This document shows, piece by piece, positions 131 through 25,698 of a DNA stretch of 26,992 nucleotides (its first letter is position 1; each line of letters begins with the position of its first letter). This DNA is from Octopus sinensis (taxonomy: Eukaryota), in assembly GCF_006345805.1 (NCBI RefSeq), contig NW_021834030.1, forward strand, positions 1 to 26,992, given 5' to 3'. Below the pieces are notes generated by a model that ran no database searches, was not told the origin of the DNA, and saw nothing but the letters and a program-made list of their open reading frames with translations. A program made the position numbers and the translations under genes.

Positions 131-189
131 AATAACTTTCTTCCTTGATTTCTCTCAACAGACATCGACCGGTGAAAAGCACATGGAAG

Positions 190-205
190 CATCATCATCA
201 TCATC

Positions 206-239
<34 letters not shown>

Positions 240-348
240 CCATCACCTATACCATCACCATCATCATCATCATCACCACCACCACCACCACCACCACCAC
301 CACCATCACCATCATCATCATCATCATCGTCATCATCATCATTATCAT
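190..348. repeat. (CAT)n/(CAC)n compound microsatellite
   Basis: Read directly; source of the poly-His and poly-Ser/Pro ORFs. Confidence 0.95.
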
Positions 349-672
349 TTCATTTTCTTACTTCATGTTTTCTCCTTCACTCCTTTCATCGGTTCTTCTT
401 CTGCCCCCCCCAACTCCTCCACATTTTTCATCACTCGAATATTTCCTTCAAACTTCTATAATTCCTTCAACTTCGTCTGCTATTCAACATGTCATCGCCA
501 TTGTTCTTTTTATGAATCTCTCTTTGTCGTAATATCCGCTTCCGCTCTTAGACTCTTTTATAGACTTGATATATCGCCATAAAACTATATCGTCTCCCAG
601 CCATCCGATTTTTCTATAATTGCTCTCTCTCGCTTTCTACCTACCAATATCTATCAATCTTTCTACCTGAAC

Positions 673-1457: not shown

Positions 1458-1862
1458 TATTCTTTTTTACTTTAGGCACAAAGCCCGAAATTTTTTGGGG
1501 AAGGGGCCAGTCGATTAGATCGACCCCACTACGCAAATGGTACTTAATTTATCGACCCCGAAACGATGAAACGCAAAGTCGACCTCGGCGAAGTTTGAAC
1601 TCAGAACCTAACGGCAGACAAAATACCTATTTCTTTACTACCCACAAGGGGCTAAACACAGAAGGGGGACAAGCAAGGACAGACAATCGGATTAAGTCGA
1701 TTATATCGACCCCAGTGCGTAACTGGTACTTAATTTATCGACCCCGAACGGATGAAAGGTAAAGTCGACCTCGGCGGGATTTGAACTCAGAACCTAACGG
1801 CAGACGAAATACCGCTGCGCATTTCGCCTGGCGTGCTAACGTTTCTGCCAGCTCACCGCCTT
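1458..1862 (-). mobile_element. SINE family A: tRNA-like head, unit with tail X, second unit with tail Y
   Basis: Head with A box (TGGCAGAAAC) and B box (GAGTTCAAAT); internal junction AAAGAAATAG|GTATTT at 1627/1626. Confidence 0.85.
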
Positions 1863-2484
1863 GAGAACCAGATTATATTGCAGTTCTTCTGACTGCTACT
1901 GCAAGGTGGCTGTTAAGTGGTATCTTTACGTGATCTTATCTTTGAACCCACATCATTTTACTGTTCCATACAAGTTTAAAGAGTTTTCTACTAACATTAT
2001 TAATCAGTCTTTTTTGAAGCTATGACTGGATGCACGGATGGACGACGGACGGACGCACGAATGGATTGATAAATGAATGAATGAATTACAATTACGCTAT
2101 TTAGCGAACGCGAATTCGTTTGAATATCTCCCTGGAAGACGCAAAAGCTTTTATCTTTACGGCTTTCTAATGGGCAGAAAGATCGTTAGCTTTAACCGTA
2201 AACACAAATCCATGGGGCCACCCGCTTTTGCATCTTCAGATGTATTGATAAGCGAAATCGCACACGTTAAAGCCTACTCGCGGGTTCTAATGGCTAAAAG
2301 AGGGGATATTGTCGATACTTTGGTAGATATTTTCCATGGTAAATGTAAAGCTTTTGCGCAGGGTACCTTAAATCCTTAAAAATGTTTTAGCCCGAAGGCT
2401 GTGGCCATGCTGGGGCACCACCGCTGAACTATTAGATTTGTACCGTCGAACTATTAGATTTGTTTGTTTTTGTTTATCCTTTTA

Positions 2485-2842: not shown

Positions 2843-3220
2843 GGTACTCCGTCGGTTGCGACGACGAGAGTTCCAGCTGATCCGATCAACGGAACAGCTT
2901 GCTCGTGAAATTAACGTGCCAGTGGCTGAGTACTCCAACGACACGTGTACCCTTAACGTAGTTCTCGGGGAGATTCAGCGTGATACAGAGTGTGACAAGG
3001 CTGGCCCCTTTGAAATACAGGTACAACAGAAACAGGAAGAGTGAGAGGAATTTGTGGTGAAAGAGTACAGCAAGGTTCGCCACAACCCCCTGCCGGAGCC
3101 TCGTGGAACTTTGTAGTTGTTTTCGCTCAATAAACACTGAAAACGCCCGGTCTGGGAATCGAAACCGCGATCCTACGACCGCGAGTTCGCTGCTCTAACC
3201 ACTGGGCCATTGAGCCTCCA
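2843..3220 (-). mobile_element. Full-length SINE family B (tRNA-Arg-like head; possibly Octopus OR1-type)
   Basis: Head with A box TGGCCCAGTGG and B box GGTTTCGATTCC; 3' tail shared with family C. Name assignment is from memory only. Confidence 0.85.
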
Positions 3221-4050
3221 CACTTTGGTCATAGATAGATGCAACGTGGCACAGCTACTGGTGGACGCAATTAGAACCGTCGATCTTGTGATCGACAGTC
3301 CAGCGTTCCATCCTACCTATTCGACAAGAATTATGCTGAAAACCACAAAAACACATAAAAGAATGATATGGTGATTTAACGAATGAAAAATATTTTATTA
3401 TATAAATATTACTAAAAAAAAAAAAAAGGAAAAAGAAAACAGCGCCATCTATTGGTTCAGCATAGTCACTATAAAAATATATTTTTATTAGAAATTTGTT
3501 TTAAACATGAGTAGAGGCTAAGAGAAAAGCTTCTCCTTCTGTATTAATCTGCTACGATTATAAAATATCATGGTCCTTATATAAATCTTATCAATTCTAA
3601 AATATAAAAATTATTTTATTAGTGACTTCCGAACAGTAAGTCTTCTTTTGTAAAATTTTATTCAGAAACTGGTCACCTTCTTAACTTCACCATTGTTCTT
3701 CGAGTCCTCTTTAAGAACAAAATATTCCAAGTAAATAAACCTGAATAAAGGAAATAAAAGTGAACTTGTCAAATATTTTATAATAAAATTACTGCGCCGT
3801 CTTTTTTTTTTATTATTATTTTCGTTTGTTTCGTTTTTTTTTATCTCTTTTTGTTTTTATAGTTTTATTTTATGAGTTAAGTCTTAAATTCTCGAATCTT
3901 GACTCAAACAAAATATTATTGCGTTATGGCGACCTTTTCTGTTTTGTTGATGCTTGCGGTGAAATAGGATTTAGAGAAATTATTGCCGACCGTGATAAAA
4001 AGAAATCGGTATCAACCAGAGAACAACAGCAACAATAATAATCTTAGCCA

Positions 4051-4465
4051 AGGCGGTGAGCTGGCAGAATCGTTAGCACGCCGGGCGAAATGCGTAGGCG
4101 TATTTCGTTTGCCGCTACGTTCTGAGTTCAAATTCCGCCGAGGTCGACTTTGCTTTTCATCCTTTCGGGGTCGATAAATTAAGTACCAGTTACGCACTGG
4201 GGTCGATGTAATCGACTTAATACCTATGTCTGTCCTTGTTTGTCCCCTCTGTGTCTAGCCCCTTGTGGGTAGTAAAGAAATAGGTATTTCGTCTACCGCT
4301 ACGTTCTGAGTTCAAATTCCACCGAGTTCGACTTTGCCTTTCATCCTTTCGGGGTCGATTAAATAAGTACCGGTTACGCACTGGGGTCGATATAATCGAC
4401 TTAATCCGTTTGCCTGTCCTTGTTTGTCCCCTCTATGTTTAGCACCGTGTGGGCAATAAAGAAAT
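4051..4465 (+). mobile_element. Dimeric SINE family A (two ~184-bp units, both with tail X), with probable TSD
   Basis: Units start at 4100 and 4284; flanks AATAATAATCTTAGCCA (4034-4050) and AATAATAATCTTTTCCA (4466-4482) match 15/17. Confidence 0.9.
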
Positions 4466-4466
4466 A

Positions 4467-4815: not shown

Positions 4816-4990
4816 AGTTCTCTATTTAAGAGATGAGGAATTATGTACATTATTTACATTTGACGGATATTTGTCCTCATCGTGTTTGTTGTTAACACAA
4901 CATTTCGGCTGATATAACCTCTAGCCTTCATCAGGTGTCTTGGGGAAATTTCGAACCTGGGTTCTAATCCTTAAGATATTTTTCAATGTT
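4816..4990 (-). mobile_element. SINE family E, 3' part without visible tRNA head
   Basis: High identity to 5421-5562 and 10320-10495. Confidence 0.8.
4894..4939 (-). ncRNA. Minimal Type I hammerhead motif, degenerate (stem III ACGT changed to ATGT)
   Basis: Minus strand reads GACAC-CTGATGA-AGGCTAG-AGGTTATA-TCAGCC-GAAA-TGTT-GTGTT. Confidence 0.55.
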
Positions 4991-5120: not shown

Positions 5121-5508
5121 ACATTATATAATTTAACCTTAGATATATTACGACAGAGAAAAGGACGTGGTAGTCACAGTCAATCAAGACTGAGCCGGTC
5201 TGTAAAATTTCCTTCAGCAGTTATATGAGCCAACGATGGAGATTTTAATCGGTCGCTGGACCTACTAGCTAGAAAAAGGAGCTACATTTCCCTCAATTCC
5301 CGTAATCTGTCATTTTAAAGAAGAATAAAAAGGACAGACTGGACAGTGTAATCGTGGTGCTGGATCTCCGTCGTGCCATCACGGTTGTCCGATCAACTGA
5401 ATTACTCTACCCTGATAACACAGTTCTATATTTAAGAGATGAGGAATTATTTACATTATTTACATTATTTACATTTGACGGATATTTGTCCTCATCTTGT
5501 TTGTTGTT

Positions 5509-5554
5509 AACACAACGTTTCGGCTGATATACCCTCCAGCCTTCATCAGGTGTC
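5509..5554 (-). ncRNA. Minimal Type I hammerhead ribozyme motif, core intact
   Basis: GACAC-CTGATGA-A-GGCTGG-AGGGTATA-TCAGCC-GAAA-CGTT-GTGTT. Stem I is GACAC/GTGTT, stem II is GGCTGG/TCAGCC, stem III is the palindrome ACGT, and the cleavage triplet is GUU. Confidence 0.8.
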
Positions 5555-5564
5555 TTGGGGAATA

Positions 5565-5689: not shown

Positions 5690-5735
5690 TGGAAAAAACC
5701 TTAGTAATGAGAACCCACGTTCGAAATTTCCCCAA

Positions 5736-5781
5736 GACACATGATGAAGGCTGAAGGGTATATCAGCTGAAACGTTGTGTT
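5736..5781 (+). ncRNA. Hammerhead motif with core mutation (CUGAUGA changed to AUGAUGA)
   Basis: GACAC-ATGATGA-AGGCTGA-AGGGTATA-TCAGCT-GAAA-CGTT-GTGTT. Confidence 0.5.
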
Positions 5782-5984
5782 AACAACAAACAAGATGAGG
5801 ACAAATATCCGTCAAATGTAAATAATGTAAATAATGTACTTTATCCTGATTTACCGGACACCTAGCAGGTGTATCCTTCATGTAATTCTCGGGAATCGAT
5901 CAACTTTGACACACTGTGTCTCTTGAATTACAGGTATAAACTGCTTGAGGAATCTTCTACGCATTTTCCGTTTACCCAGTATCG

Positions 5985-6620: not shown

Positions 6621-6633
6621 CACAACACTAGGA

Positions 6634-6956
6634 GCACTCCGTCGGTTACGACGACGAGGGACCCAGCTGGTACGATCAACGCAACAGTTTGCTTGTGAAA
6701 TTAACGAGCAAAGTGGCTGAGCACTCCACAGATACGTGTACCCTTAATGTAGTTCTCGGGGAGATTCAGCGTGACACAGAATGTGACAAGGCTGACCCTT
6801 TGAAATACAGGTACTACTCATTTTTGCCAGCTGAGTGGACTGGAGCAACATGAAATAAAGTGTCTTGCTCAAGGACCCAACGCACCGCCGGGAATTGAAC
6901 TCACGACCTTACAATCGGGAGCTGAATGCCCCTAACCACTAAGCCACACGCCTTCA
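6634..6956 (-). mobile_element. SINE family C copy 2, full length with ~13-bp TSD (possibly OR2-type CORE-SINE)
   Basis: Flanks CACAACACTAGGA (6621-6633) and CACAACAACTAGGA (6957-6970); A and B boxes; CORE-like GGTCCTTGAGCAAGACACTTTATTTC. Confidence 0.85.
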
Positions 6957-6970
6957 CACAACAACTAGGA

Positions 6971-7280
6971 ACACTCCGTCGGTTGCGACGACGAGGGACT
7001 CAGCTGATACGATCAACGGAACAGCTTGCTCGTGAAATCAACGTGCAAGTGGCTGAGCATTCCACAGACGCATATACCTCAGGGAGATCCAGCGTGATAC
7101 AGAGTGTGACAAGGCTGACCCCTTTCAATTACAGGTACACCTCATTTTTGCCAGCTGAATGGACTGGAGCAACGCGAAATAAAGTGTCTTGCTCAAGGGC
7201 CCAACGCGCCGCCGGGAATTGAACTCACGACTTTACGATCATGAGCTAAATACCCTAACCACTAAGCCATGCACCTTCAC
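6971..7280 (-). mobile_element. SINE family C copy 3
   Basis: High similarity to 6634-6956, with a short internal deletion. Confidence 0.85.
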
Positions 7281-7703
7281 GCACAACGTCTACGGCAGCA
7301 TCGACGACTACAACGTCAGACCGTACTATTTCGCTGCTAGTCGGTCGGTCGGTTATAGCATCGTCAGGCTGACAAAGAAGTGTGTTGCTTTCAGCAACAA
7401 CCGTAAATAGCAACGGACAGCGAAGGAGATGCAATGCAGCCCAGTAGACGGAAATATTTATAAAATTGTACATTTATCTGTTACCTGCGCAAGAAATATT
7501 TTTAGCCGTGTATTGATTTTAATTTTTAATTAGTTTTTTTACTTTTATTTTCTTTCAATTTTTTCTTTCTTTTACTTTTTGTATGTCTATTTTCTTAGAG
7601 AGAAAGTTATGGTACTTACGAAGAAGATTAAGTAACGATTTTACGTAAGAATTTGGCAAACTGATTTTTCTTTTTATGAATACGCAATACATGCTAACAA
7701 AAT

Positions 7704-8093
7704 GCTGCAGAATCGATAGGGCATCGGGCAAAATGCCTTGTGGTATTTCTTCCGTCTTTTTATTTTACGTTCTGAGTTCAAATCCTGTCGAAGTCGACTC
7801 TCCTTTTCATTCTTTCGGGGTCGATAAATTAAGTACCAGTTACGCACTGGGGTCGATGTAATCGACTTAATCCGTTTGTCTGTCCTTGTTTGTCCCCTCT
7901 GTGTGTAGCCCTTTGTGGGTAGTAAAGAAATAGGTATTTCTTCCGTCGTTTTATTTTACGTTCTGAGTTCAAATCCTGTCGAAGTCGACTTTCCTTTTCA
8001 TTCTTTCGGGGTCGATAAAATAAAGTGCCAGTCGGTTCTGAGGTTGATGATGTCAATTAACCTCCTATCCTCGACAATTTATGGGCCTACGCC
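7704..8093 (+). mobile_element. Old family A copy containing a young 105-bp tail-X insert flanked by an 86-bp direct repeat
   Basis: 7743-7828 and 7934-8019 match 84/86; insert at 7829-7933 is close to 14866-14968. Confidence 0.85.
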
Positions 8094-8303
8094 AAGGCGG
8101 GGAGCTGACAGGATCGTCATCGCGCCGGAAAAATATTTAGCGGCATTCCGTCCGCTTTTGCGTTCCGAGTTCGAATTCCGCCGAAGTCACTTCGCCTTTC
8201 AACCTTTCGGTGTCGATAAAATAAGTACCAGTTTAGTACTAGGGTCGGTTTAATCAACTTACCTCTACCCCAAACCTGCTGGCCTTGTGCCAAAATTCGA
8301 AAT
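8094..8303 (+). mobile_element. Monomeric SINE family A (tail Y)
   Basis: AAGGCGGGGAGCTGACAG head, GAGTTCGAATTCC B box, body and tail Y. Confidence 0.75.
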
Positions 8304-8315
8304 CATTATTATTAT

Positions 8316-8844
8316 TGAATGAGAGAGCAGTGTACGCCATCAAAGTGACACTGGGGTAAAATATACGAAGCCCAGTACACCCATCATGACTATCCGTCTG
8401 ATAAGGGTATACTATATACAAGCATTACAAACATATGTGCACGACATGATGATCTCATATAAAGATAAACAGCGCATGACCTTGCATGTGGGGCCCAGCT
8501 AGAAATTCCTTCAGGTCAAGTAGCCTATCCCACTCAAATGGTCCTTGAATAAGGATGTTGAACGAAACACCCATTTTTCCAGAGGTGTATTATTCAAACC
8601 CCAAAGAATTCCTCTCAACACGTGGCTATGACGCTCTCCCACTATTTCTCCTCATGATCAGAGATGCGCATATCGTTGGCTATCAAGGGACATGCTCAAC
8701 TGGTTATGGTCAAACAAATGACATGCAAATCTGTGGTATTGAGCAGAATATTTGCTGCAGCCCATCTTTTATACCAAGACAAAACACGTACATGATAACA
8801 CTTCCAATCAGTTAAGACCAGAAGCCACGAGAGCCAGTGCCTGC
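8316..8844. repeat. Unclassified ~530-bp interspersed repeat (family F), copy 1, bounded by (ATT)n
   Basis: Colinear, highly similar direct repeat of 8859-9319. Confidence 0.8.
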
Positions 8845-9385: not shown

Positions 9386-9681
9386 TAGTTTTATTTTTTA
9401 TAGTGTGCTTTCACTTCACTACCGAGCGCAGCTCTGTGTGCCTTGGGTATGTGCTGTGATATGTTGTGATGCTCTGATGGTTATTGTATGGAAAGTGTTC
9501 TGCGTAGGATGTGTGCAGTGCCTAGTAGTGCAATTTTCTGTATGTTATATGTGTTTGTAAGTCCTGGTGTTTTTGTTATGTATTTGTCTGAATATTTTTT
9601 TATCATGCCTAATGCACCTACTATGATAGGAATTGTTTCTGTTTTTAGATTCCACATTCTGGGTACCTCTATTTCCAGGTC

Positions 9682-9683
<2 letters not shown>
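9382..9683 (-). mobile_element. 5'-truncated RLE-type non-LTR retrotransposon (R4/Dong-like) inside (TAA)n
   Basis: 9681 to 9481 is an intact frame: DLEIEVPRMWNLKTETIPIIVGALGMIKK..IQKIALLGTAHILRRTLSIQ*, a typical RLE C-terminus. TTA repeats lie on both sides. Confidence 0.85.
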
Positions 9684-9718
<35 letters not shown>

Positions 9719-9725
9719 CATTATT

Positions 9726-9930: not shown

Positions 9931-10398
9931 TGTTGTTGTTGTTGTTGTAATTCTTATCCTAACAAGATAAATTACGTATCGCACCCACGTTTAAATTGCA
10001 TACATTTTGTTGAATTTCTTTCCAAAACTACGATACGTGTGGGTTTTTTTCTGTGTTGTGTGGCATAAAATCGTTGCAAAAAATTATAAGAAATTTTATT
10101 TTAATTTCTACGTCTCGTTCGAGCAAAAAAAAATTAAAGAATTAAAGAGAAGATATTTTCTTAGAAGCAGTTTTTGGTTTATCTAGAGACAACACTCCCA
10201 CGTTACGAAAGAAAATGTTTGACAAACACTCCAAACACACAAATAAGACAAGAAAATATTTGAAAATTAGTACTGTACTACAGAACATACATTTCGTAAC
10301 AAAATATAACGTAATAATACAGTTCTATATTTAAGAGATGAGGAATTATGTACATTATTTACAATTGACGGATATTTGTCGTCATCTTGTTTGTTGTT

Positions 10399-10444
10399 AA
10401 CATAACGTTTTGGCTGATATACCCTCCAGCCTTCATCAGGTGTC
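10399..10444 (-). ncRNA. Hammerhead motif with GAAA changed to AAAA (G12A), likely inactive
   Basis: GACAC-CTGATGA-AGGCTGG-AGGGTATA-TCAGCC-AAAA-CGTT-ATGTT. Confidence 0.5.
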
Positions 10445-10602
10445 TTGGGGGAAATTTCAAACCTGGGTTCTCATTCCTAAGGTATTTTTCGATGTTATTA
10501 TTATTATTATTATTGTTATTGTTCAGGTCACTGCTTGGAATCGAACTAGGAATCTTGGGGTTAGTAGCCCGCGCTCTTAACCCACGTTCGAAATTTCCCC
10601 AA

Positions 10603-10648
10603 GACACCTGAAGAAGGCTGGAGGGTGTATCAACCGAAACGTTGTGTT
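10603..10648 (+). ncRNA. Hammerhead motif, core intact (CUGAAGA and GAAA), one stem II mismatch
   Basis: GACAC-CTGAAGA-AGGCTGG-AGGGTGTA-TCAACC-GAAA-CGTT-GTGTT. Confidence 0.7.
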
Positions 10649-10749
10649 AACAGCAAACAAGATGAGGACAAATAACCGTCGAATGTAAACAATGTAAATA
10701 TTGTAAATAATGTATAACGCAATGATGTTTCTATAAGCATTCATGTAAA

Positions 10750-12225: not shown

Positions 12226-12537
12226 GTGATCACGTGACCGACCAGACCATCAGATGTTGTTACACATCGCTGGTCACAATGCGTTCGCATTGTTTTTTTA
12301 GCCTTCGAATGACGCCACCGCCCAGCTGGCTAAGCGAGCAGGCCAACAGAAGAAAGAGTGGGAGAAAGTTGTGGTGAAAGAGTACAGCAGGATCACCACC
12401 ACCCCTGCCGGAGCCTCGTGGAGCTTTTTTTAGGTGTTTTCGCTCAATAAACACTCACAACGCCCGGTCTGGGAATCGAAACCGCGATCCTGCGCCCGCG
12501 AGTCCGCTGCCCTAACCACTAGGCCATTGCGCCTCCA
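12224..12537 (-). mobile_element. SINE with family B head and body and a different 3' tail (B')
   Basis: 12345-12537 matches family B; 12224-12344 does not match the B/C tail and ends at a (TA)n run. Confidence 0.7.
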
Positions 12538-12854
12538 CACACACACACACACACACACACACAATATATATATATATATATATATCATACGCACAAACAC
12601 ACACACACACAGACACACACACGTGCGTGTGTTGTGCGCTTCTCTCTCATTCTTAGTCTCTGCTTCGGTGTCTCTCTCTCGGTCTTCCATTCTTTAAGAC
12701 CTTTGGCTATATAAGCCCTAGATCAATACACGCATGTGGAACCTCGATATTTTTAATTTCCTCTCGGCTTTCTACATGGCTTAACATTCAGAATAGAAAT
12801 AATGAACAGTAACTTGAAAAGATACGGCATGAAGGGAGGGGATAAATCGCTAAA

Positions 12855-14340: not shown

Positions 14341-14550
14341 TTTTTTTGTTATTAATGTTATGCGGGCGGTGAAAGGCAGCGAACTGGCAGAATCGTTAAG
14401 ATGTCAGTTAACGGTTGCACTGCCAGCTCGCTGCCTTAATGTGCATATATCATACAGGGTGTTCAAAAAGTCTCTCCGCAGTAAATATTTCGATGACCGC
14501 CATTTTATTTTATCAAACTTTGAAAGACATCATGGCATAAGACTACAAAA

Positions 14551-14970
14551 GGCGGCGAGCTGGCAGAAACGTTAGCACGCCGGGCGAAATGCTTAGCGGT
14601 ATTTCGGCTGCCGCTACGTTCTGAGTTCAAATTCCGCCGAGGTCAACTTTGCCTTTCATCCTTTCGGGGGTCGATAAATTTAGTACCAGTTAAGCACTGG
14701 GGTCGATGTAATCGACTTAATACCTATGTCTGTCCTTGTTTGTCCCCTCTGTGTTTAGCCCCTTGTGGGTAATAAAGAAATAGGTATTTCGTCTGTCGCT
14801 ACGTTCTGAGTTCAAATTCCGCCGGGGTCAACATTCCCTTTAATCCTTTCGGGGGTCGATAAATTTAGTACCAGTTACGCACTGGGGTCGATGTAATCGA
14901 CTTAATCCGTTTGTCTGTCCTTGTTTGTCCTCTCTGTGTTTAGCCCCTTGTGGGCAGTAAAGAAATAGGT
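14551..14970 (+). mobile_element. Young dimeric SINE family A (185-bp units) nested in the Tc1 element, 14-bp TSD
   Basis: ATAAGACTACAAAA at 14537-14550 and 14971-14984; units start at 14599 and 14784. Confidence 0.92.
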
Positions 14971-15018
14971 ATAAGACTACAAAAGAATATATTAGACTTT
15001 ACAAGACTTTAAAAAACT

Positions 15019-15496: not shown

Positions 15497-15753
15497 TGGG
15501 GGAGGGGACTAGTTGATCCCATCGACCCCGAAAGGATGAAAGGCAAAGTCGACTTCGGCGGAATTTGATCTCAGAACGCAACGGCGGACGAAATACCACA
15601 AAGCATTTCGTCCGGCGTGCTAACGTTTCTGCCAGCTCGCCGCTTTGTTTGTTGCTTGTCGACTTTGCCTTTCACACTTTCGGGGTCGACGGGATCAACT
15701 AGTCCCCCTCCCCTCAAATCTCAGGTCTTGTTCCTTTAGTAGAAAGGATTATT
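15497..15753. mobile_element. Inverted pair of family A segments (minus 15497-15644, plus 15658-15753)
   Basis: Both carry the same internal deletion, giving GGGGTCGA(T/C)GGGATCAACTAGTCCCC. Confidence 0.75.
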
Positions 15754-16597: not shown

Positions 16598-16929
16598 CTC
16601 TCTCTCTCTCTCTATCTGCTCAGTCGAAGTCGACTCTCGGTCACTCGTTGGATCAGTGTCCTCCAGTCAGTTCTACCCTGGGCCGCTTCGTTCAGATTGG
16701 CTATGTCCATTCCGGAATCCCTCTTGATGGTGCCAAGCCAGCGGGTTCTTGGTCGGCCTCTTCCTCTCTTGCCACTGACCATTCCGAGCATGATGTCCTT
16801 CTCCAGGGATTTTCTCCGCATAATATGACCGAAATATGCCAATCTATGCTTGGTGATCCTAGCTTCTAGCGACATTTTCGGCTTATCTGCTTAAGAACTT
16901 CCCCATTGGTGAGCTTCGCTGTCCATGGA
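16598..16929 (-). mobile_element. 5'-truncated RTE-clade (BovB-like) LINE 3' end with (GA)n tail
   Basis: PWTAKLTNGEVLKQI, a frameshift, then MSLEARITKHRLAYFGHIMRRKSLEKDIMLGMVSGKRGRGRPRTRW (ORF 16612-16875). Confidence 0.85.
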
Positions 16930-18043: not shown

Positions 18044-18459
18044 GTATGTATGTATGTATGTATGCATGCATGTATGTATGTATGTATATATGAATGTATG
18101 TATGTATATATGTATGTATGTATGCATGTATGCATGTATGTATGTATGTATGCATGTATGTATGTATTAATGTATTTATGTATGTATGCATGTATGTATG
18201 TATGTTTGCATGCATGCATGTATATATGTAAGTATGTATGTATGTATGTATGCATGCATGTAGGTATATATGCATGCATGTATGTATGTATGTATGAATG
18301 TATTTATGTATGTATGCCTGCATGTTTGTATGTATGTATGCATGCATGCATGTATGTATGTATGCATGTATGTATGTATTATGTATGTATGTATGTAGGT
18401 ATGTATGTATGCATGTATGTAAGGATGTATGTATGTATGTATGCCTGTATGCCAGTATG
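17950..18459. repeat. (TATG)n microsatellite with CATG variants
   Basis: Read directly. Confidence 0.92.
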
Positions 18460-20330
18460 TATGTATGTATATAACTATTATGTATGTATGAATGTATGCA
18501 TGCTTGTATGTATGTATATAACTATTATGTATGTATGAATGTATGCATGCTTGTATGTATGTATATAACTATTATGTATGTATGAATGTATGCATGCTTG
18601 TATGTATGAATATAACTATTATGTATGTATGAATGTATGCATGCTTGTATGTATGTATATAACTATTATGTATGTATGAATGATGCATGCTTGTATGTAT
18701 GTATATAACTATTATGTATGTATGAATTGTATGCATGCTTGTATGTATGTATATACTATTATGTATGTTGAATGTATGCATGCTTGTATGTATGTATATA
18801 ACTATTATGTATGTATGAATGTATGCATGCTTGTATGTATGAATATAACTATTATGTATGTATGAATGTATGCATGCTTGTATGTATGTATATAACTATT
18901 ATGTATGTATGAATGTATGCATGCTTGTATGTATGTATATAACTATTATGTATGATGAAGTATGCATGCTTGTATGTATGAATATAACTATTATGTATGT
19001 ATGATGTATCATGCTTGTATGTATGTATATATACATTATGTATGTATGAATGTATGCATGCTTGTATGCATGTATATAACTATTATGTATGTATGAATGT
19101 ATGCATGCTTGTATGTATATATAACTATTATGTATGTATGAATGTATGCATGCTGTGTATGCATGTATATAACTATTATGTATGTTATGAATGTATCCAT
19201 GCTTGTATGTATGTATATAACTATTATGTATGTATGAATGTATGCATGCTTGTATGCATGTATATAACTATTATGTATGTATGAATGTATGCATGCTTGT
19301 ATGTATGTATATAACTATTATGTATGTATGAATGTATGCATGCTTGTATGTATGTATATAACTATTATGTATGTATGAATGTATGCATGCTTGTATGTAT
19401 GTATATAACTATTATGTATGTATGAATGTATGCATGCTTGTATGCATGTATATAACTATTATGTATGTATGAATGTATGCATGCTTGTATGTATGTATAT
19501 AACTATTATGTATGTATGAATGTATGCATGCTTGTATGCATGTATATAACTATTATGTATGTATGAATGTATGCATGCTTGTATGTATGTATATAACTAT
19601 TATGTATGTATGAATGTATGCATGCTTGTATGTATGTATATAACTATTATGTATGTATGAATGTATGCATGCTTGTATGTATGTATATAACTATTATGTA
19701 TGTATGAATGTATGCATGCTTGTATGTATGTATATAACTATTATGTATGTATGAATGTATGCATGCTTGTATGCATGTATATAACTATTATGTATGTATG
19801 AATGTATGCATGATTGTATGTATGTATATAACTATTATGTATGTATGAATGTATGCATGCTTGTATGTATGTATATAACTATTATATATGTATGAATGTA
19901 TGCATGCTTGTATGTATGTATATAACTATTATGTATGTATGAATGTATGCATGCTTGTATGTATGTATATAACTATTATGTATGTATGAATGTATGCATG
20001 CTTGTATGCATGTATTAACTATTATGTATGTATGAATGTAATGCATGCTTGTATGTATGTATATAACTATATTATGTATGAATGTATCATGCTTGTATGT
20101 ATGTATATAACTATTATGTATGTATGAATGTATGCATGCTTGTATGTATGAATATAACTATTATGTATGTATGAATGTATGCATGCTTGTATGCATGTAT
20201 ATAACTATTATTTATGTATGAATGTATGCATGCTTGTATGTATGTATATAACTATTATGTATGTATGTATGTATGTATGTATGTATGTATGTATGTATGT
20301 ATGTATGTATGTATGCATGCTTGTATGTAT
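18460..20330. repeat. 47-bp minisatellite, about 38-39 units
   Basis: Unit TATATAACTATTATGTATGTATGAATGTATGCATGCTTGTATGTATG; period 47 confirmed at 19361, 19408 and 19455. Confidence 0.95.
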
Positions 20331-21235: not shown

Positions 21236-21546
21236 AAGACTGAGAGAGAGGGTGAGATGGAGGGAGAGAGAGAGCGATGCGTTGGAATTGAGATAAATAT
21301 ACGTGCAATTGGAAAGATAGTTGTTAAAAGATTTAGCTGTCAATCGTTAAATTGATCTTCCCTGCTGAGGTCTGATACGGCAGAAACTTGCCAGGAGTTG
21401 TGTCACCATTACTAACGAGCAGATTGACTTACACCAATACATTCCATTCGTAATTAGTTTTAATTAACCAAAGTTTCGATTTTGACGAAGTTTAGTTACT
21501 TGCAAAATGAATATTCTTGTGTTTCTAAACGTGTTATATTAAATAG

Positions 21547-21854
21547 TGGTGGCGCAATGGCCGAGTGGTTAGAGCAGCGGACTCGCGGTCGTAGGAGCGC
21601 GCTTTCGATTCCTAGACCGGACGTTGTGAGTGTATATTTAGCGAAAACACGTAAAGCTCCACGAGGCCCCTGCAGGGGGTCGTGGCGAACCCTGCTGTGC
21701 TCTTTCACCACAACTTTCTCTCACTCTTTCTTCCTGTTTCTGTTGTACCTGTATTTCAAAGGGCCAGCCTTGTCGCACTCTGTGTTATGCTGAATCTCTC
21801 CACGCGTCTGTGGAGTTCTCAGCCACTTGCACGTTAATTTCGCGAGAGGGCTGT
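21547..21854 (+). mobile_element. SINE family B, internally deleted and 3'-truncated
   Basis: Reverse complement of most of 2900-3220. Confidence 0.8.
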
Positions 21855-21857
21855 GAA

Positions 21858-21987
21858 CCAAATTCACTAACAAGGCTTTGGTCGGCCCGAGGCTATAGTA
21901 GAAGACACTTGCCCAAGGTGCCACGCAGTGGGACTGAACCCGGAACGATGTGGATGGTAAGCAAGCTACTTACCACACAGCCACTCA
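21858..21987 (-). mobile_element. SINE family D head
   Basis: Matches 16999-17096 in reverse and 26820-26930. Confidence 0.8.
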
Positions 21988-21989
21988 CT

Positions 21990-22309
21990 AATAATCGTTT
22001 CTACTATAGACACAAGTATTGAAATTTGGGGGTGGTGAGGGGACTGGTCGATAACATCGACCTCAGTCTTTCACTGGTACTCAATTTATTGGCCCCGAAA
22101 GGATGAAAGGTAAAGTGGACCTCGGCGATAGACAAAGGGGACAAACAAGAACAGACACACGGATTAAGTCGATTAGATCGACCCAGCCTTTCACTGGTAC
22201 TCAGTTTATCGGCCCCGAAAGGATGAAAGGTAAGGTGGACCTCGGCGACAGACGAAATACCGCTAAGCATTTTGTCCGGCGTGCTAACGAATTTGTCAGC
22301 TCGCTGCTT
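21990..22309 (-). mobile_element. Family A copy with partial tail-X insert and 66-bp host duplication
   Basis: 22068-22133 and 22188-22253 match 62/66 and share private variants. Confidence 0.8.
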
Positions 22310-23503: not shown

Positions 23504-24412
23504 ATTATTAATAATTGAGACGCAATTATTTATAATTGAAGAGTCCTACGCTAAGGAGGAAAATAGTTAGGTAAGACATAGTTATTTAATTTTTATGCTC
23601 TGCAATGACTTAATTCCGAAACGTGCGTCCGTAGGTAACTTAATATAGAATGATTTTCGTCATTTCTTTCTCTTTTGCTTGCGTCGTTTGTCTTTTAAGT
23701 GCTTTGGTTTTACTGGGATCTCCCTTTTAAGTAGAAAGAATAGCCAAAACTTTTTGACTGCTATTTCTAAATTCGGTGTGTGGGAGGCAAATCGTTGCTG
23801 AACCCTTAATTACTTAGTATTACTTACTAAACTTCTTGAATGGGTCTTTTACATGCGAACTCTACTTGGTGAAATTAATGATTATTTCTAAATAATTAAT
23901 TGCACCCTTTATTATTGATAATTGTATTTCTTCCCAGTAAAAAACTGTAGCATCTTATTTTGGCAACACGCTGGCGGAAGGGGGAAGGTGACTTACTTTC
24001 ATTCACCCTTTGAAATTGGCTGTACTGGCAAGAATTACGCTCGCTCTGATACCATGAGTTGAGGTGATGTCTTCTAGTGCCTTCAAATTTAATACACAAT
24101 TATTAATACTTGAGACGCAGTTATTTATAATTGAAGAATCCTACGCTGAGGAGGAAAATAGTCAGGTAAGACATAGTTATTTAATTTTTATGCTCTGCAA
24201 TGACTTAATTCCGAAACGTGCGTCCGTAGGTAACGTAATATAGAATGATTTTCGTCAGTTCTTTCTCTTTTGCCTGCGTCGTTTGTCTTTTAAGTGCTTT
24301 GGTTTTACTGGGATCTCCCTTTTAAGTAGAAAGAATAGCCAAAACTTTTTGACTGCTATTTCTAAATTCGGTGTGTGGTGAGGCAAATCGTTGCTGAACC
24401 CTTAATTACTTA
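23504..24412 (-). repeat. ~313-bp direct repeats (23504-23816, 24099-24412) with a 282-bp spacer; possible TRIM-like LTR element
   Basis: The repeat is read directly. The minus strand has CA|TGGTATCAGAGC (PBS-like) at 24054-24043. The LTR interpretation is inferred. Confidence 0.6.
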
Positions 24413-25007: not shown

Positions 25008-25240
25008 TAGTTTTATTTTTATAGCGTGCTTTCACTTCACTACCGAGCGCAGCTCTGTGTGCCTTGGGTATGTGCTGTGATTTGTTGTGATGCTCTGATG
25101 GTTATAGTATGGAAAGTGTTCTGCGTAGGATGTGTGCAGTGTCTAGTAGTGCAATTTTCTGTATGTTATATGTGTTTGTAAGTCCTGGTGTTTTTGTTAT
25201 GTATTTGTCTGAATATTTTTTTATCATGCCTAATGCACCT
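25004..25240 (-). mobile_element. Second copy of the Dong-like RLE 3' end, flanked by (TAA)n
   Basis: Near-identical to 9382-9620; encodes GALGMIKKYSDK..LLDTAHILRRTLS. Confidence 0.85.
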
Positions 25241-25260
25241 AATAAAAAATATTCAGACAA

Positions 25261-25291
<31 letters not shown>

Positions 25292-25318
25292 TATTATTAT
25301 TATTATTATTATTATTAT

Positions 25319-25698
25319 GTTTTTTCCTTCTTTCTTCAAATTTTCTTCCGTTTTAGGCCGAGTGTTTCCCATACACCTAGGGCAGAGAAGCTCATTGTAT
25401 GCATTCCCAGATTACACACGCAAATTCACAGATAAAATATGTATTTAAAAATGAATAAATAAATAAATTCATGGATGGATGTTGTTTTCACAGCGATAAT
25501 GCTCTTCTCAGTACATGAGCCGTTCCAGTTACTACGATATTTTGCACTTCCTGTAGGGACGGTTGCCTGGAATCATTTTCAAATAGGTTTCAGTCCCTTT
25601 TTTATCATTCCTAGAGATCCTACAATCACTGGTACTGTAGTCGCCTTGAGATGCCACATTTTTTAAATTTCTATTAGCAGGTCTTTATATTTACTAAT
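25319..25698 (-). mobile_element. Different RLE-type (R4/Dong-like) family 3' end, flanked by (TAA)n
   Basis: 25698 to 25488: ISKYKDLLIEI*KMWHLKATTVPVIVGSLGMIKK, then VTGTAHVLRRALSL*, then a 3' UTR and TAA tail. Confidence 0.8.

What the first reader, a model, noticed from the sequence alone, without database searches (positions are those of the whole stretch)
7743..8019. A young SINE tail module inside an old SINE copy, with an 86-bp duplication of the host
Seen: 7743-7828 and 7934-8019 match 84/86. They share variants absent from other family A copies here: the TTTTATTTT expansion, AATCCTGTCGAAGTC and TCCTTTTCATTC. The 105 bp between them is near-identical to the young tail X of other loci, while the sequence after the second repeat is heavily decayed tail Y. 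A dimeric RNA cannot explain this, because the duplicated part carries the old host's private mutations. Inference: tail-X sequence was written into an existing family A copy at a fixed point (AAAGAAATAG|GTATTT) and joined at its 5' end by homology. This could be sequence-specific self-targeted retrotransposition with an unusually long target duplication, similar to R2 5' homologous junctions, or a template switch to an RNA or DNA donor. Either way, a SINE subfamily would be parasitising and rejuvenating its own relatives.
Basis: partly seen in the sequence, partly recalled or inferred. Interest (0 to 1): 0.8.

Follow-up and report, generated by a model that had tools for sequence, protein, structure and literature searches.

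The report
Young SINE piece inside old copy
An old, decayed copy of an octopus SINE has gained a 105-base piece of a young two-unit relative, flanked by two near-identical copies of its own body, which points to homology-guided copying between SINE copies; this is of moderate interest to transposon specialists and ordinary otherwise.

Summary
7743-7828 and 7934-8019 match 84/86. The 105 bases between them differ from the young family consensus at 2 positions. The head, both body copies and the 3' remnant of the host are 15-30% diverged.

The window is octopod DNA. The repeat is a SINE built from a head H, a body B and a tail X or Y.

The junction AAAGAAATAG|GTATTTC is not peculiar to this locus. 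It lies inside three other two-unit copies (H-B-X-B-tail) in the window, each flanked by its own short target duplication. A two-unit subfamily therefore exists. In this small sample, tail X of the GGTATTTC-linked type is only seen inside such composites.

In every informative composite the two B units share locus-specific changes. One composite carries the same 23-base deletion in both units.

My best reading (about 0.45) is an RNA-templated, target-primed insertion into a resident copy. The X end would be primed at the copy's own GGTATTTC, and the 5' side resolved by homology, which duplicates 69-86 bases of host body.

The rivals are DNA template switching during repair, an old dimer changed by two gene conversions, a chimeric RNA copied in from elsewhere, and an assembly artefact.

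The ideas of site-specific targeting and "rejuvenation" remain unproven. I could not reach more of this genome for a census.

The parts
7698..7742 (+). Decayed head (H*) of the old host SINE
   Evidence: It aligns to the 52-base head consensus with about 30% mismatches and gaps, whereas the heads at 4048 and 14549 are 96-98% identical to the consensus.
7743..7811 (+). First body unit, host-type part (B1-62 plus a 7-base insertion)
   Evidence: It carries t8, c11, t13, t16, the 7-base insertion, c35, t37, t39, a43, c53, t55 and t62, all shared with the second unit.
7812..7828 (+). Left crossover window: 17 bases (CTTTCGGGGTCGATAAA) identical in the host and the young sequence
   Evidence: The last host marker is at B62 and the first young-specific base is at B80.
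7829..7933 (+). Young insert: B80-120 (7829-7869) plus the complete tail X (7870-7933)
   Evidence: It has 2 differences from the consensus in 105 bases. B80-120 is identical to unit 4100. All four CpG sites are intact.
7933..7940 (+). Right junction: 8-base GGTATTTC shared by the X|B junction and the host's own H*|B* boundary (7742-7749)
   Evidence: The host marker t8 follows directly at 7941.
7934..8019 (+). Second body unit, the part repeated from the first (B1-79, host type)
   Evidence: It matches 7743-7828 at 84/86. One difference looks derived in each copy.
8020..8091 (+). Old 3' half of the host body plus a truncated Y-type tail remnant
   Evidence: 14 of 44 B positions differ from the consensus. 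The Y tail lacks its last ~19 bases and abuts the next SINE.
8092..8318 (+). Neighbouring old monomer SINE (H-B-Y/Z tail-(ATT)n) directly abutting the host
   Evidence: Its modules match the consensus at 77-82%. The sequence is shown.
4048..4466 (+). Comparator: two-unit copy H-B-X-B-X with the same internal junction and a perfect 12-base target duplication AATAATAATCTT
   Evidence: Its 3' unit and tail carry markers of the X-type monomer found in O. bimaculoides.
14549..14970 (+). Comparator: two-unit copy H-B-X-B-X with target duplication ATAAGACTACAA. Its terminal X runs on into GGTAT.
   Evidence: Both units share a47, an extra G at position 67, and t82.
1462..1863 (-). Comparator: two-unit copy H-B-X-B-Y with a 15-base target duplication (1 mismatch). 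Its junction reads GGTATTTTG.
   Evidence: Both units share t16 and g19.
21990..22302 (-). Comparator: composite H-B'-X(1-33)-B'(9/10-117)-Y with a different junction. Both units carry the same 23-base deletion of B13-35.
   Evidence: The partner is the nearest unit (10% against 12.5-15% or more).

Best explanation
The window comes from an octopod genome rich in a SINE with three modules: a 52-base head (H), a 120-base body (B) and a tail of type X or Y. One subfamily has two units, H-B-X-B-tail.

At 7698-8091 lies an old, decayed Y-tailed monomer (H*-B*-Y*). I propose that it received a piece of a young X-bearing RNA by target-primed reverse transcription at the copy itself, in these steps (all inferred; only the end product is shown):

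1. A DNA 3' end at the host's own GGTATTTC (the H*|B* boundary) paired with an RNA whose 3' end reads ...AAAUAGGUAU(UU). Two-unit or longer masters could yield such an RNA.
2. Reverse transcriptase copied tail X and about 41-57 bases of body.
3. The new cDNA was then captured by the host's homologous body sequence within the 17 identical bases CTTTCGGGGTCGATAAA.

Because the start point lies upstream of the body and the capture point lies inside it, 69-86 bases of host body end up on both sides of the insert, like an over-long target duplication.

The event dates to about 1-2% divergence ago, while the host is far older. The same kind of event, in other backgrounds, would account for the other composites in the window.
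For: (1) Host body positions B8-62 occur on both sides of the insert with the same 11 substitutions and the same 7-base insertion. They differ from each other at 2 of 76 positions, while the nearest other unit is 13-15% away.

(2) The insert differs from the consensus at 2 of 105 positions, against 13/76, 14/44 and about 30% for the adjoining host parts. Fisher test for body against insert: p = 0.0005.

(3) One difference per repeat copy, and 2 in the insert, fit a single event.

(4) Host marker t8 lies 8 bases from the edge of unit homology. In the composite at 22302 the shared 23-base deletion starts 3-4 bases from that edge. Homologous conversion between units cannot transfer such markers, whereas block duplication can.

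(5) Across composites, shared derived states are highest for the true within-locus pairing. It is the top of 120 permutations, and the top of 24 when the focal locus is left out.

(6) The right boundary is always at or near the X end (host type from before B8, B13, B16 and B47), while the left crossover varies (B63-79, B83 or later, B97 or later). This fits synthesis that starts at the X 3' end and ends by homologous capture.

(7) The two-unit copy at 14549 ends ...AAATAGGTAT followed by its target duplication. This shows that cDNA synthesis does start on RNAs that read on into GGUAU.

(8) The five composites have five different 3' backgrounds but the same inner module.

(9) The family shows other irregular outcomes of target-primed insertion: an inverted, twin-priming-like copy at 15498-15713, and head-to-tail pile-ups.
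Against: - There is only one clear young-in-old case, and the whole family sample is 27 kb plus 76 kb.
- The duplicated stretch (69-86 bases) is far longer than the family's usual 11-15 base target duplications. The site G^GTATTTC does not resemble their A/T-rich starts (ATAAG, AATAAT, AATAT, TATAAG).
- No free-standing copy ending in the inner-type X (…AAATAG) is present. X-ended monomers elsewhere end …GAAATAAATA.
- Only three changes (t8, t39 and the insertion) are strictly private to the host. Part of the host's 'age' is therefore subfamily difference.
- The composite at 22302 lacks the last 31 bases of X, which a primed X 3' end does not predict without a later deletion.
- No partner LINE was identified.
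- The three canonical two-unit copies can also be read as plain copies of two-unit masters.
Confidence: 0.45

Rival explanations
1. DNA-templated template switching during replication or break repair (MMBIR/FoSTeS, or SDSA with re-invasion). A nascent DNA end left the host body inside the 17 identical bases and copied B80-120 plus X from a young two-unit copy elsewhere. It then returned to the host's own GGTATTTC 76-86 bases upstream. The result is a small tandem duplication with a templated insert at its junction.
For: The product has the typical signature: a local duplication, a templated insert, and short identity at both junctions (17 and 8 bases). Young two-unit donors that carry exactly X followed by GGTATTTC exist. 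No unusual nick site or staggered cut is needed.
Against: None of the X copies in the window matches the insert as donor. The return switch would need only 8 bases, and it would have to fall at the very start of the second unit here and near it in the other composites (before B8, B13, B16 and B47). The joint chance is about 0.002 if boundaries were uniform over B1-76 and the composites arose independently (my calculation).
Confidence: 0.2
2. The locus is an old two-unit copy (H*-B*-X*-B*-Y*) changed by two later events. Gene conversion between its two body units made them alike, and an ectopic conversion from a young two-unit copy replaced the decayed middle.
For: Two-unit copies are an established subfamily with this exact junction. 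Partial conversion of old SINE copies by young ones is well documented for Alu (own knowledge). Shared unit variants in other composites could also reflect conversion.
Against: It needs two recent events with complementary boundaries in one old element. The converted tract between units would have to include t8, with only 8-9 bases of homology beyond it. The 23-base deletion shared at 22302 cannot be transferred that way either.
Confidence: 0.12
3. The chimera formed at the RNA level. Reverse transcriptase copying a transcript of an old-lineage copy switched to an X-bearing RNA and back by homology, and the finished composite was then inserted here as one unit. On this reading the 'old' changes are those of a source copy elsewhere.
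For: Template switching is the standard explanation for module exchange between SINEs (PMC4758252; PMC3272025). It would also give a fixed 3' junction and a variable 5' crossover.
Against: It needs two switches, the first from an internal position of the template. It needs transcription of a copy with a decayed head; in the 22302 case both units lack the box-B-like motif. The composite lacks the last ~19 bases of its Y tail, which an insertion primed at that tail should have. No flanking target duplication could be found.
Confidence: 0.12
4. Assembly or polishing artefact. Reads from young copies were mis-placed or used to 'correct' the middle, or a repeat was mis-joined.
For: The region is dense in near-identical repeats. 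A gap-flanking duplicate of the same SINE is visible in the O. bimaculoides assembly.
Against: The host-specific variants are kept on both sides, with one difference in each copy. Polishing towards the consensus would have erased them.
Confidence: 0.05

Closest known systems
Chimeric L1 formation, i.e. homology-resolved target-primed reverse transcription (Gilbert et al. 2002, 2005; Symer et al. 2002; Zingler et al. 2005; cited from my own knowledge, not read here)
   Same: A nascent cDNA made at a nick is joined at its 5' side by pairing with a resident homologous element rather than by ordinary end joining. The crossover point varies within the homology.
   Different: In L1 chimeras the resident element lies upstream of the nick and the intervening DNA is deleted. 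Here the homologous sequence is the target itself, downstream of the start point, so host sequence is duplicated. Here the 3' junction also lies in register with the host.
Partial gene conversion of old Alu copies by young ones (own knowledge)
   Same: A tract of young subfamily sequence sits inside an old copy and is bounded by homology.
   Different: Conversion does not duplicate recipient sequence. Here host B8-62 is present twice and the element gains 191 bases.
Composite or dimeric SINEs formed by reverse-transcriptase template switching (reviewed in PMC4758252 and discussed in PMC3272025; Twin SINE and Alu from own knowledge)
   Same: A two-unit subfamily with a fixed internal junction and exchangeable tails (X or Y) clearly exists in this window.
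   Different: Those models build new masters from RNAs. The focal locus, and the composite at 22302, need duplication of sequence carrying changes of a dead resident copy.
R2 and other site-specific non-LTR elements with variable, homology-assisted 5' junctions (own knowledge)
   Same: A fixed 3' junction and a variable 5' junction.
   Different: No site-specific endonuclease element or conserved target outside the SINE itself is seen. Most identical junctions here can be explained by descent.
MMBIR/FoSTeS rearrangements between dispersed repeats, for example Alu/Alu-mediated rearrangements (PMC6071635)
   Same: A small duplication with a templated insert and microhomology at both junctions.
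   Different: The donor is not in cis within the window. The right-hand boundary at the X end recurs across composites.
CORE-SINEs, including octopus OR1 (listed in PMC4824008)
   Same: The body stretch TTTCATCCTTTCGGGGTCGATAAATTAAGTACC resembles the CORE domain as I remember it, and the host is an octopod.
   Different: I did not compare it with a reference OR1 or CORE sequence. This is a lead only.

Membership tests
SINE (non-autonomous, LINE-mobilised retroposon) | Short non-coding element flanked by variable target-site duplications | tested here: met
   Target duplications of 12, 12-15, 15 and 11 bases flank the copies at 4048, 14549, 1863 and L042:40600-40900.
SINE (non-autonomous, LINE-mobilised retroposon) | Head derived from a tRNA or other small RNA, with an internal Pol III promoter | tested here: inconclusive
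   A box-B-like GAGTTCAAATTCC lies at B24-36. ARAGORN finds no tRNA, and Rfam gives no match even at E<=5.
SINE (non-autonomous, LINE-mobilised retroposon) | 3' tail shared with a partner LINE | tested here: not met
   The only LINE fragment in the window (16615-16890, minus strand) ends in (GA)n and does not match X or Y. The partner may lie elsewhere in the genome.
Two-unit (dimeric) SINE subfamily | Two homologous units inside one pair of target duplications, with the same internal junction in independent loci | tested here: met
   Three loci have the junction AAAGAAATAG|GTATTTC and target duplications flanking the whole element. Two loci share the inner-X marker ACCTATG.
Target-primed insertion with target-site duplication | Host sequence is duplicated directly on both sides of an insert that ends with the element's 3' terminus | tested here: met
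   A duplication of 69-86 bases flanks an insert that ends with the complete tail X.
Target-primed insertion with target-site duplication | Duplication length and nick-site motif typical of the family | tested here: not met
   The family's duplications are 11-15 bases and start ATAAG, AATAAT, AATAT or TATAAG. Here the duplication is 69-86 bases and starts GGTATTTC.
Site-specific (R2-like) retrotransposition | Independent insertions at one target sequence, driven by a sequence-specific endonuclease element | tested here: inconclusive
   Four identical junctions are present, but three can be explained by descent from two-unit masters. One composite has another junction. No such LINE is present.
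Ectopic gene conversion between repeats | The recipient keeps its architecture: a tract is replaced and recipient sequence is not duplicated | tested here: not met
   Host B8-62 is present in both units and the element is 191 bases longer than a monomer.
MMBIR/FoSTeS templated insertion | Local duplication with an insert copied from elsewhere and microhomology at both junctions | tested here: met
   There are 17 and 8 identical bases at the two junctions. No donor was found in the window. This feature does not separate DNA from RNA templates.
CORE-SINE superfamily (OR1-like) | Conserved ~60-base CORE domain in the body | not tested
   This is a resemblance recalled from memory.

The most novel reading that the evidence does not exclude
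The inner X module is a self-homing unit. RNAs from two-unit or longer masters end in …AAAUAGGUAU(UU), because transcription stops at, or cDNA synthesis starts in, the TATTT(T) that opens the next unit. These RNAs are guided by 3'-end base pairing to the GGTATTTC present in every resident family member. Insertion in register then turns monomers of any subfamily, dead ones included, into two-unit copies. Composite SINEs would then arise repeatedly at the DNA of relatives rather than from a few masters.
Probability: 0.2. Interest if true: 0.7.

Novelty: new variant of a known kind. Interest (0 to 1): 0.42.

Why it matters
Composite and multi-unit SINEs are usually explained by rare template switches that create a new master. 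If the proposed mechanism is right, there is a second route: a SINE RNA is copied in register into a resident relative, with both junctions set by homology. That would explain three things seen here. Every composite in the window has a different background. The two units of a composite share private changes. And a short tandem repeat can be seeded inside a dispersed element, which may be a first step towards SINE-derived satellites. It would also mean that subfamily ages inferred from divergence can be mosaic within a single copy. If one of the rivals is right instead, the locus is a clear but ordinary example of sequence exchange between dispersed repeats.

Tried and rejected
Getting more of the genome for a junction census mostly failed.
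- The exact junction pattern gave 40 metagenome hits and 1 viral hit. None contains the SINE, so they are chance matches.
- A core pattern found nothing in bacterial/archaeal genomes or in viral contigs.
- Protein searches with antisense SINE translations and with a LINE fragment gave only P0001-P0004.
- From those I obtained one 76-kb, gap-ridden O. bimaculoides locus (L042) and one 543-base ENA contig (L043). L042 holds about 20 copies but no two-unit copy with the junction.
- Looking up the window's own ORF across the junction found nothing.

Other checks that led nowhere.
- ARAGORN and Rfam give no tRNA or other RNA family for the head.
- Tandem Repeats Finder does not see the 1.45-copy repeat.
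- No LINE 3' end matches X or Y.
- Literature searches found no description of two-unit octopus SINEs or of in-register SINE-into-SINE insertion.

Ideas rejected.
- A simple tandem duplication of a 191-base unit: the sequences after the two units differ at 14 of 44 positions.
- Ordinary double-strand-gap repair from a two-unit donor: it cannot duplicate host B8-62.
- The GGGTAG versus GGGCAR difference as a marker of 'inner' versus 'terminal' X: L043 has a terminal X with GGGTAA.
- A first nick at the host's ATAA-like site at B79|80: the predicted junction is not the observed one.

Full report
**What the window is.** The window is AT-rich eukaryotic DNA full of microsatellites and short dispersed repeats. 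An antisense translation of the main repeat hits an 'uncharacterized protein' of Octopus bimaculoides. The 76-kb chromosome segment around that gene (L042) carries about 20 copies of the same repeat. The window is therefore octopod DNA; the species is not determined.

**The repeat family.** The repeat behaves as a SINE. Copies are 230-420 bases, non-coding, and flanked by 11-15 base target duplications. I split it into four modules:
- a head H of 52 bases;
- a body B of 120 bases, with a box-B-like GAGTTCAAATTCC;
- tail X of 64 bases, ending AAAGAAATAG;
- tail Y (or a related Z form) of about 46 bases, ending AAAGTAAAAAAG or similar.

ARAGORN and Rfam do not recognise the head. The body resembles the CORE domain of CORE-SINEs, a group that includes octopus OR1 (PMC4824008). 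That is a recollection and I did not test it.

**The observation.** 7743-7828 and 7934-8019 match at 84 of 86 positions, and the match begins one base earlier. The 105 bases between the repeats are B80-120 plus a complete tail X. They differ from the consensus at two positions, and their B part is identical to the unit at 4100. The sequence after the second repeat differs from the consensus at 14 of 44 positions, and it runs into a truncated Y remnant that abuts the next SINE at 8092. The head in front (7698-7742) is about 30% diverged, with gaps.

Two refinements apply. First, several 'private' variants (c11, t13, t16, a43) are markers of older Y/Z-tailed monomers. Only t8, t39 and the 7-base insertion are absent from all 23 other units I aligned. 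The haplotype as a whole is nevertheless unique: the partner is 2.6% away and the nearest other unit 13-15%. Second, the young and host sequences cannot be told apart over 17 bases on the left (7812-7828) and 8 bases on the right (GGTATTTC, 7933-7940).

**The junction is a family feature.** AAAGAAATAGGTATTT occurs four times in the window, against 0.13 expected by chance. The other three cases lie inside complete two-unit elements:
- H-B-X-B-X at 4048-4466;
- H-B-X-B-X at 14549-14970;
- H-B-X-B-Y at 1863-1462 (minus strand).

Each is flanked as a whole by its own target duplication. The inner X of 4048 and 14549 shares a three-base marker (ACCTATG) that their terminal X lacks. In B1-76 their units are no closer to their partners than to units of other loci. 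A two-unit subfamily therefore exists, and identical junctions alone do not prove repeated targeting.

X-ended monomers also exist: L042:40600-40900 and the ENA contig L043. Both end …GAAATAAATA rather than …AAATAGG. A fifth composite at 22302-21990 (minus strand) has a different junction, X33|B9-10.

**Simple descent is still not enough.** At the focal locus, host positions B8-62 are present twice with identical changes. Gap repair from a two-unit donor would split the host body between the two units and would not duplicate it.

In the composite at 22302 both units carry the same 23-base deletion (B13-35), which removes the box-B-like motif. The deletion starts only 3-4 bases from where the two units begin to be homologous. 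At the focal locus, t8 lies 8 bases from that edge. Homologous conversion between the units needs flanking homology that is not there, so the units must have been duplicated as blocks after those changes arose.

Across all five composites, the number of derived states shared by first and second units is highest for the true within-locus pairing. It is the top of 120 permutations, and the top of 24 when the focal locus is excluded. The five composites have five different 3' backgrounds: the X-type of the O. bimaculoides monomer, an inner-like X, and three different Y types. All have the same inner module.

**Direction of the process.** Host-type sequence resumes in the second unit before B8 (focal locus), B13 (22302), B16 (1863) and B47 (14549). 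The crossover in the first unit lies at B63-79, B83 or later, and B97 or later where it can be placed. A fixed right end and a variable left end fit synthesis that starts at the 3' end of X and stops when enough body has been copied to pair with the host. That is the direction in which reverse transcriptase copies an RNA. If the right boundary were a homologous crossover placed uniformly in B1-76, and the four composites arose independently, the joint chance of these four values is about 0.002 (my calculation).

The two-unit copy at 14549 ends …AAATAGGTAT followed by its target duplication. cDNA synthesis therefore does begin on RNAs that read from X on into GGUAU, the very bases that can pair with GGTATTTC at the head/body boundary of any resident copy. 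In the copy at 1863 the junction reads GGTATTTTG. That run of four T could stop Pol III; this last point is inference.

**Best explanation (about 0.45).** An RNA-templated, target-primed event took place at the old resident copy. It was primed at the copy's own GGTATTTC and resolved on the 5' side by homology within CTTTCGGGGTCGATAAA. This duplicated 69-86 bases of host body. One derived difference in each repeat copy and two in the insert date the event to about 1-2% divergence ago, in a host that is far older (Fisher p = 0.0005 for body against insert). The end product is shown; every step is inferred.

Weak points:
- the duplication is much longer than the family's 11-15 base target duplications;
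- the site does not resemble their A/T-rich starts;
- no partner LINE was found;
- the 22302 junction needs a later 40-base deletion or internal priming;
- there is only one clear young-in-old case.

**Rivals.**
- DNA template switching in replication or repair gives the same product and needs no odd nick site. It does not explain the recurrent right boundary, and no donor is in the window (0.2).
- An old dimer altered by two conversions fails on the markers that lie at the edge of homology (0.12).
- A chimeric RNA inserted as one unit needs two switches and transcription of a decayed copy. It also conflicts with the missing 3' end of the Y tail (0.12).
- An assembly or polishing artefact is unlikely because host-specific variants survive on both sides (0.05).

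**Comparison with what is known.** The closest precedent is the resolution of L1 insertion intermediates by pairing with a resident L1 ('chimeric L1'; own knowledge). There the result is a deletion; here the homologous partner is the target itself and the result is a duplication. Partial Alu gene conversion, template-switch origin of composite SINEs (PMC4758252, PMC3272025), R2-type fixed 3' and variable 5' junctions, and microhomology-mediated rearrangements between Alus (PMC6071635) each share some features. The membership table lists which defining features were met. I file the locus as a new variant of known kinds of exchange between SINE copies, not as a new kind of element.

**Limits.** I could not search the source genome. 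The metagenome, viral and prokaryote scans and the protein-based look-ups yielded only L042 and L043. All family-level statements rest on 5 composites and about 25 body units. The census and the empty-site test listed under next steps would settle the matter.

Noticed in passing
window 15498-15713: A SINE copy with an inverted 5' part. Two 56-base arms are 91% complementary and lie 104 bases apart: head and body on the minus strand, then body from B44 and a Y tail on the plus strand. It looks like a twin-priming product with a 56-base overlap.
   Followed up: partly
window 15498-15713 (also B68-76 and B99-107 of the consensus): The body contains a direct repeat GGGGTCGAT twice. This copy lacks the 31 bases between the two, so it is either a deletion variant or a short subfamily.
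   Followed up: no
window 14955-14985: The terminal tail X of the two-unit copy runs on as AAATAGGTAT before the target duplication, as if the source RNA came from an element with three or more units.
   Followed up: partly
window 16615-16890 (minus strand): An open frame with the C-terminal motifs typical of a LINE reverse-transcriptase protein (…GRGRPRTRW…DWR…), followed by (GA)n. Its 3' end does not match SINE tails X or Y. The best database relatives are 56-68% identical fragments on short contigs.
   Followed up: partly
window 18299-20300: A long minisatellite with a 47-base period (about 60 units, 98-99% identical in its core), embedded in TATG/CATG-type microsatellite sequence.
   Followed up: no
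window 4840-4985, 5446-5562, 5690-5838, 10345-10456, 10579-10711: A second short dispersed repeat family is present in both orientations (87-97% identity between copies), often next to (ATT)n runs.
   Followed up: no
window 3118-3226, 12429-12538, 21541-21655: A third short repeat family (87-89% identity between copies). The pieces at 2889-3041, 6632-6850, 6926-7219 and 21724-21969 share translated motifs (…TLNVVLGEIQRDTECDKAGP…) and may belong to it.
   Followed up: no
window 23504-23783 and 24099-24378: A 280-base direct repeat, 97% identical, with 595 bases start to start.
   Followed up: no
window 9470-9724 and 25091-25432: Two stretches give nearly the same translation (CSDGY.MESVLRRMCAV.SSAIFCMLYVFVSPGVFVMYLSEYFFIMPNAP…), each next to long (ATT)n runs. 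This is a duplicated segment or another repeat family.
   Followed up: no
window 157-350: A long (CAT/CAC)n run that reads as a poly-histidine open frame. It is most likely a microsatellite and not a gene.
   Followed up: no
L042 40782-40797: In the O. bimaculoides assembly, a run of 10 N sits inside a SINE and is flanked by the same 50 bases of that SINE on both sides. This is a gap-closing duplicate, not a real two-unit copy.
   Followed up: partly
window 8065-8092; L042 4389-4431 and 65995-66615: Family members often sit head to tail within 0-12 bases of one another's tails, forming pile-ups of two or three copies. This suggests insertion guided by tail-like target sequence.
   Followed up: no
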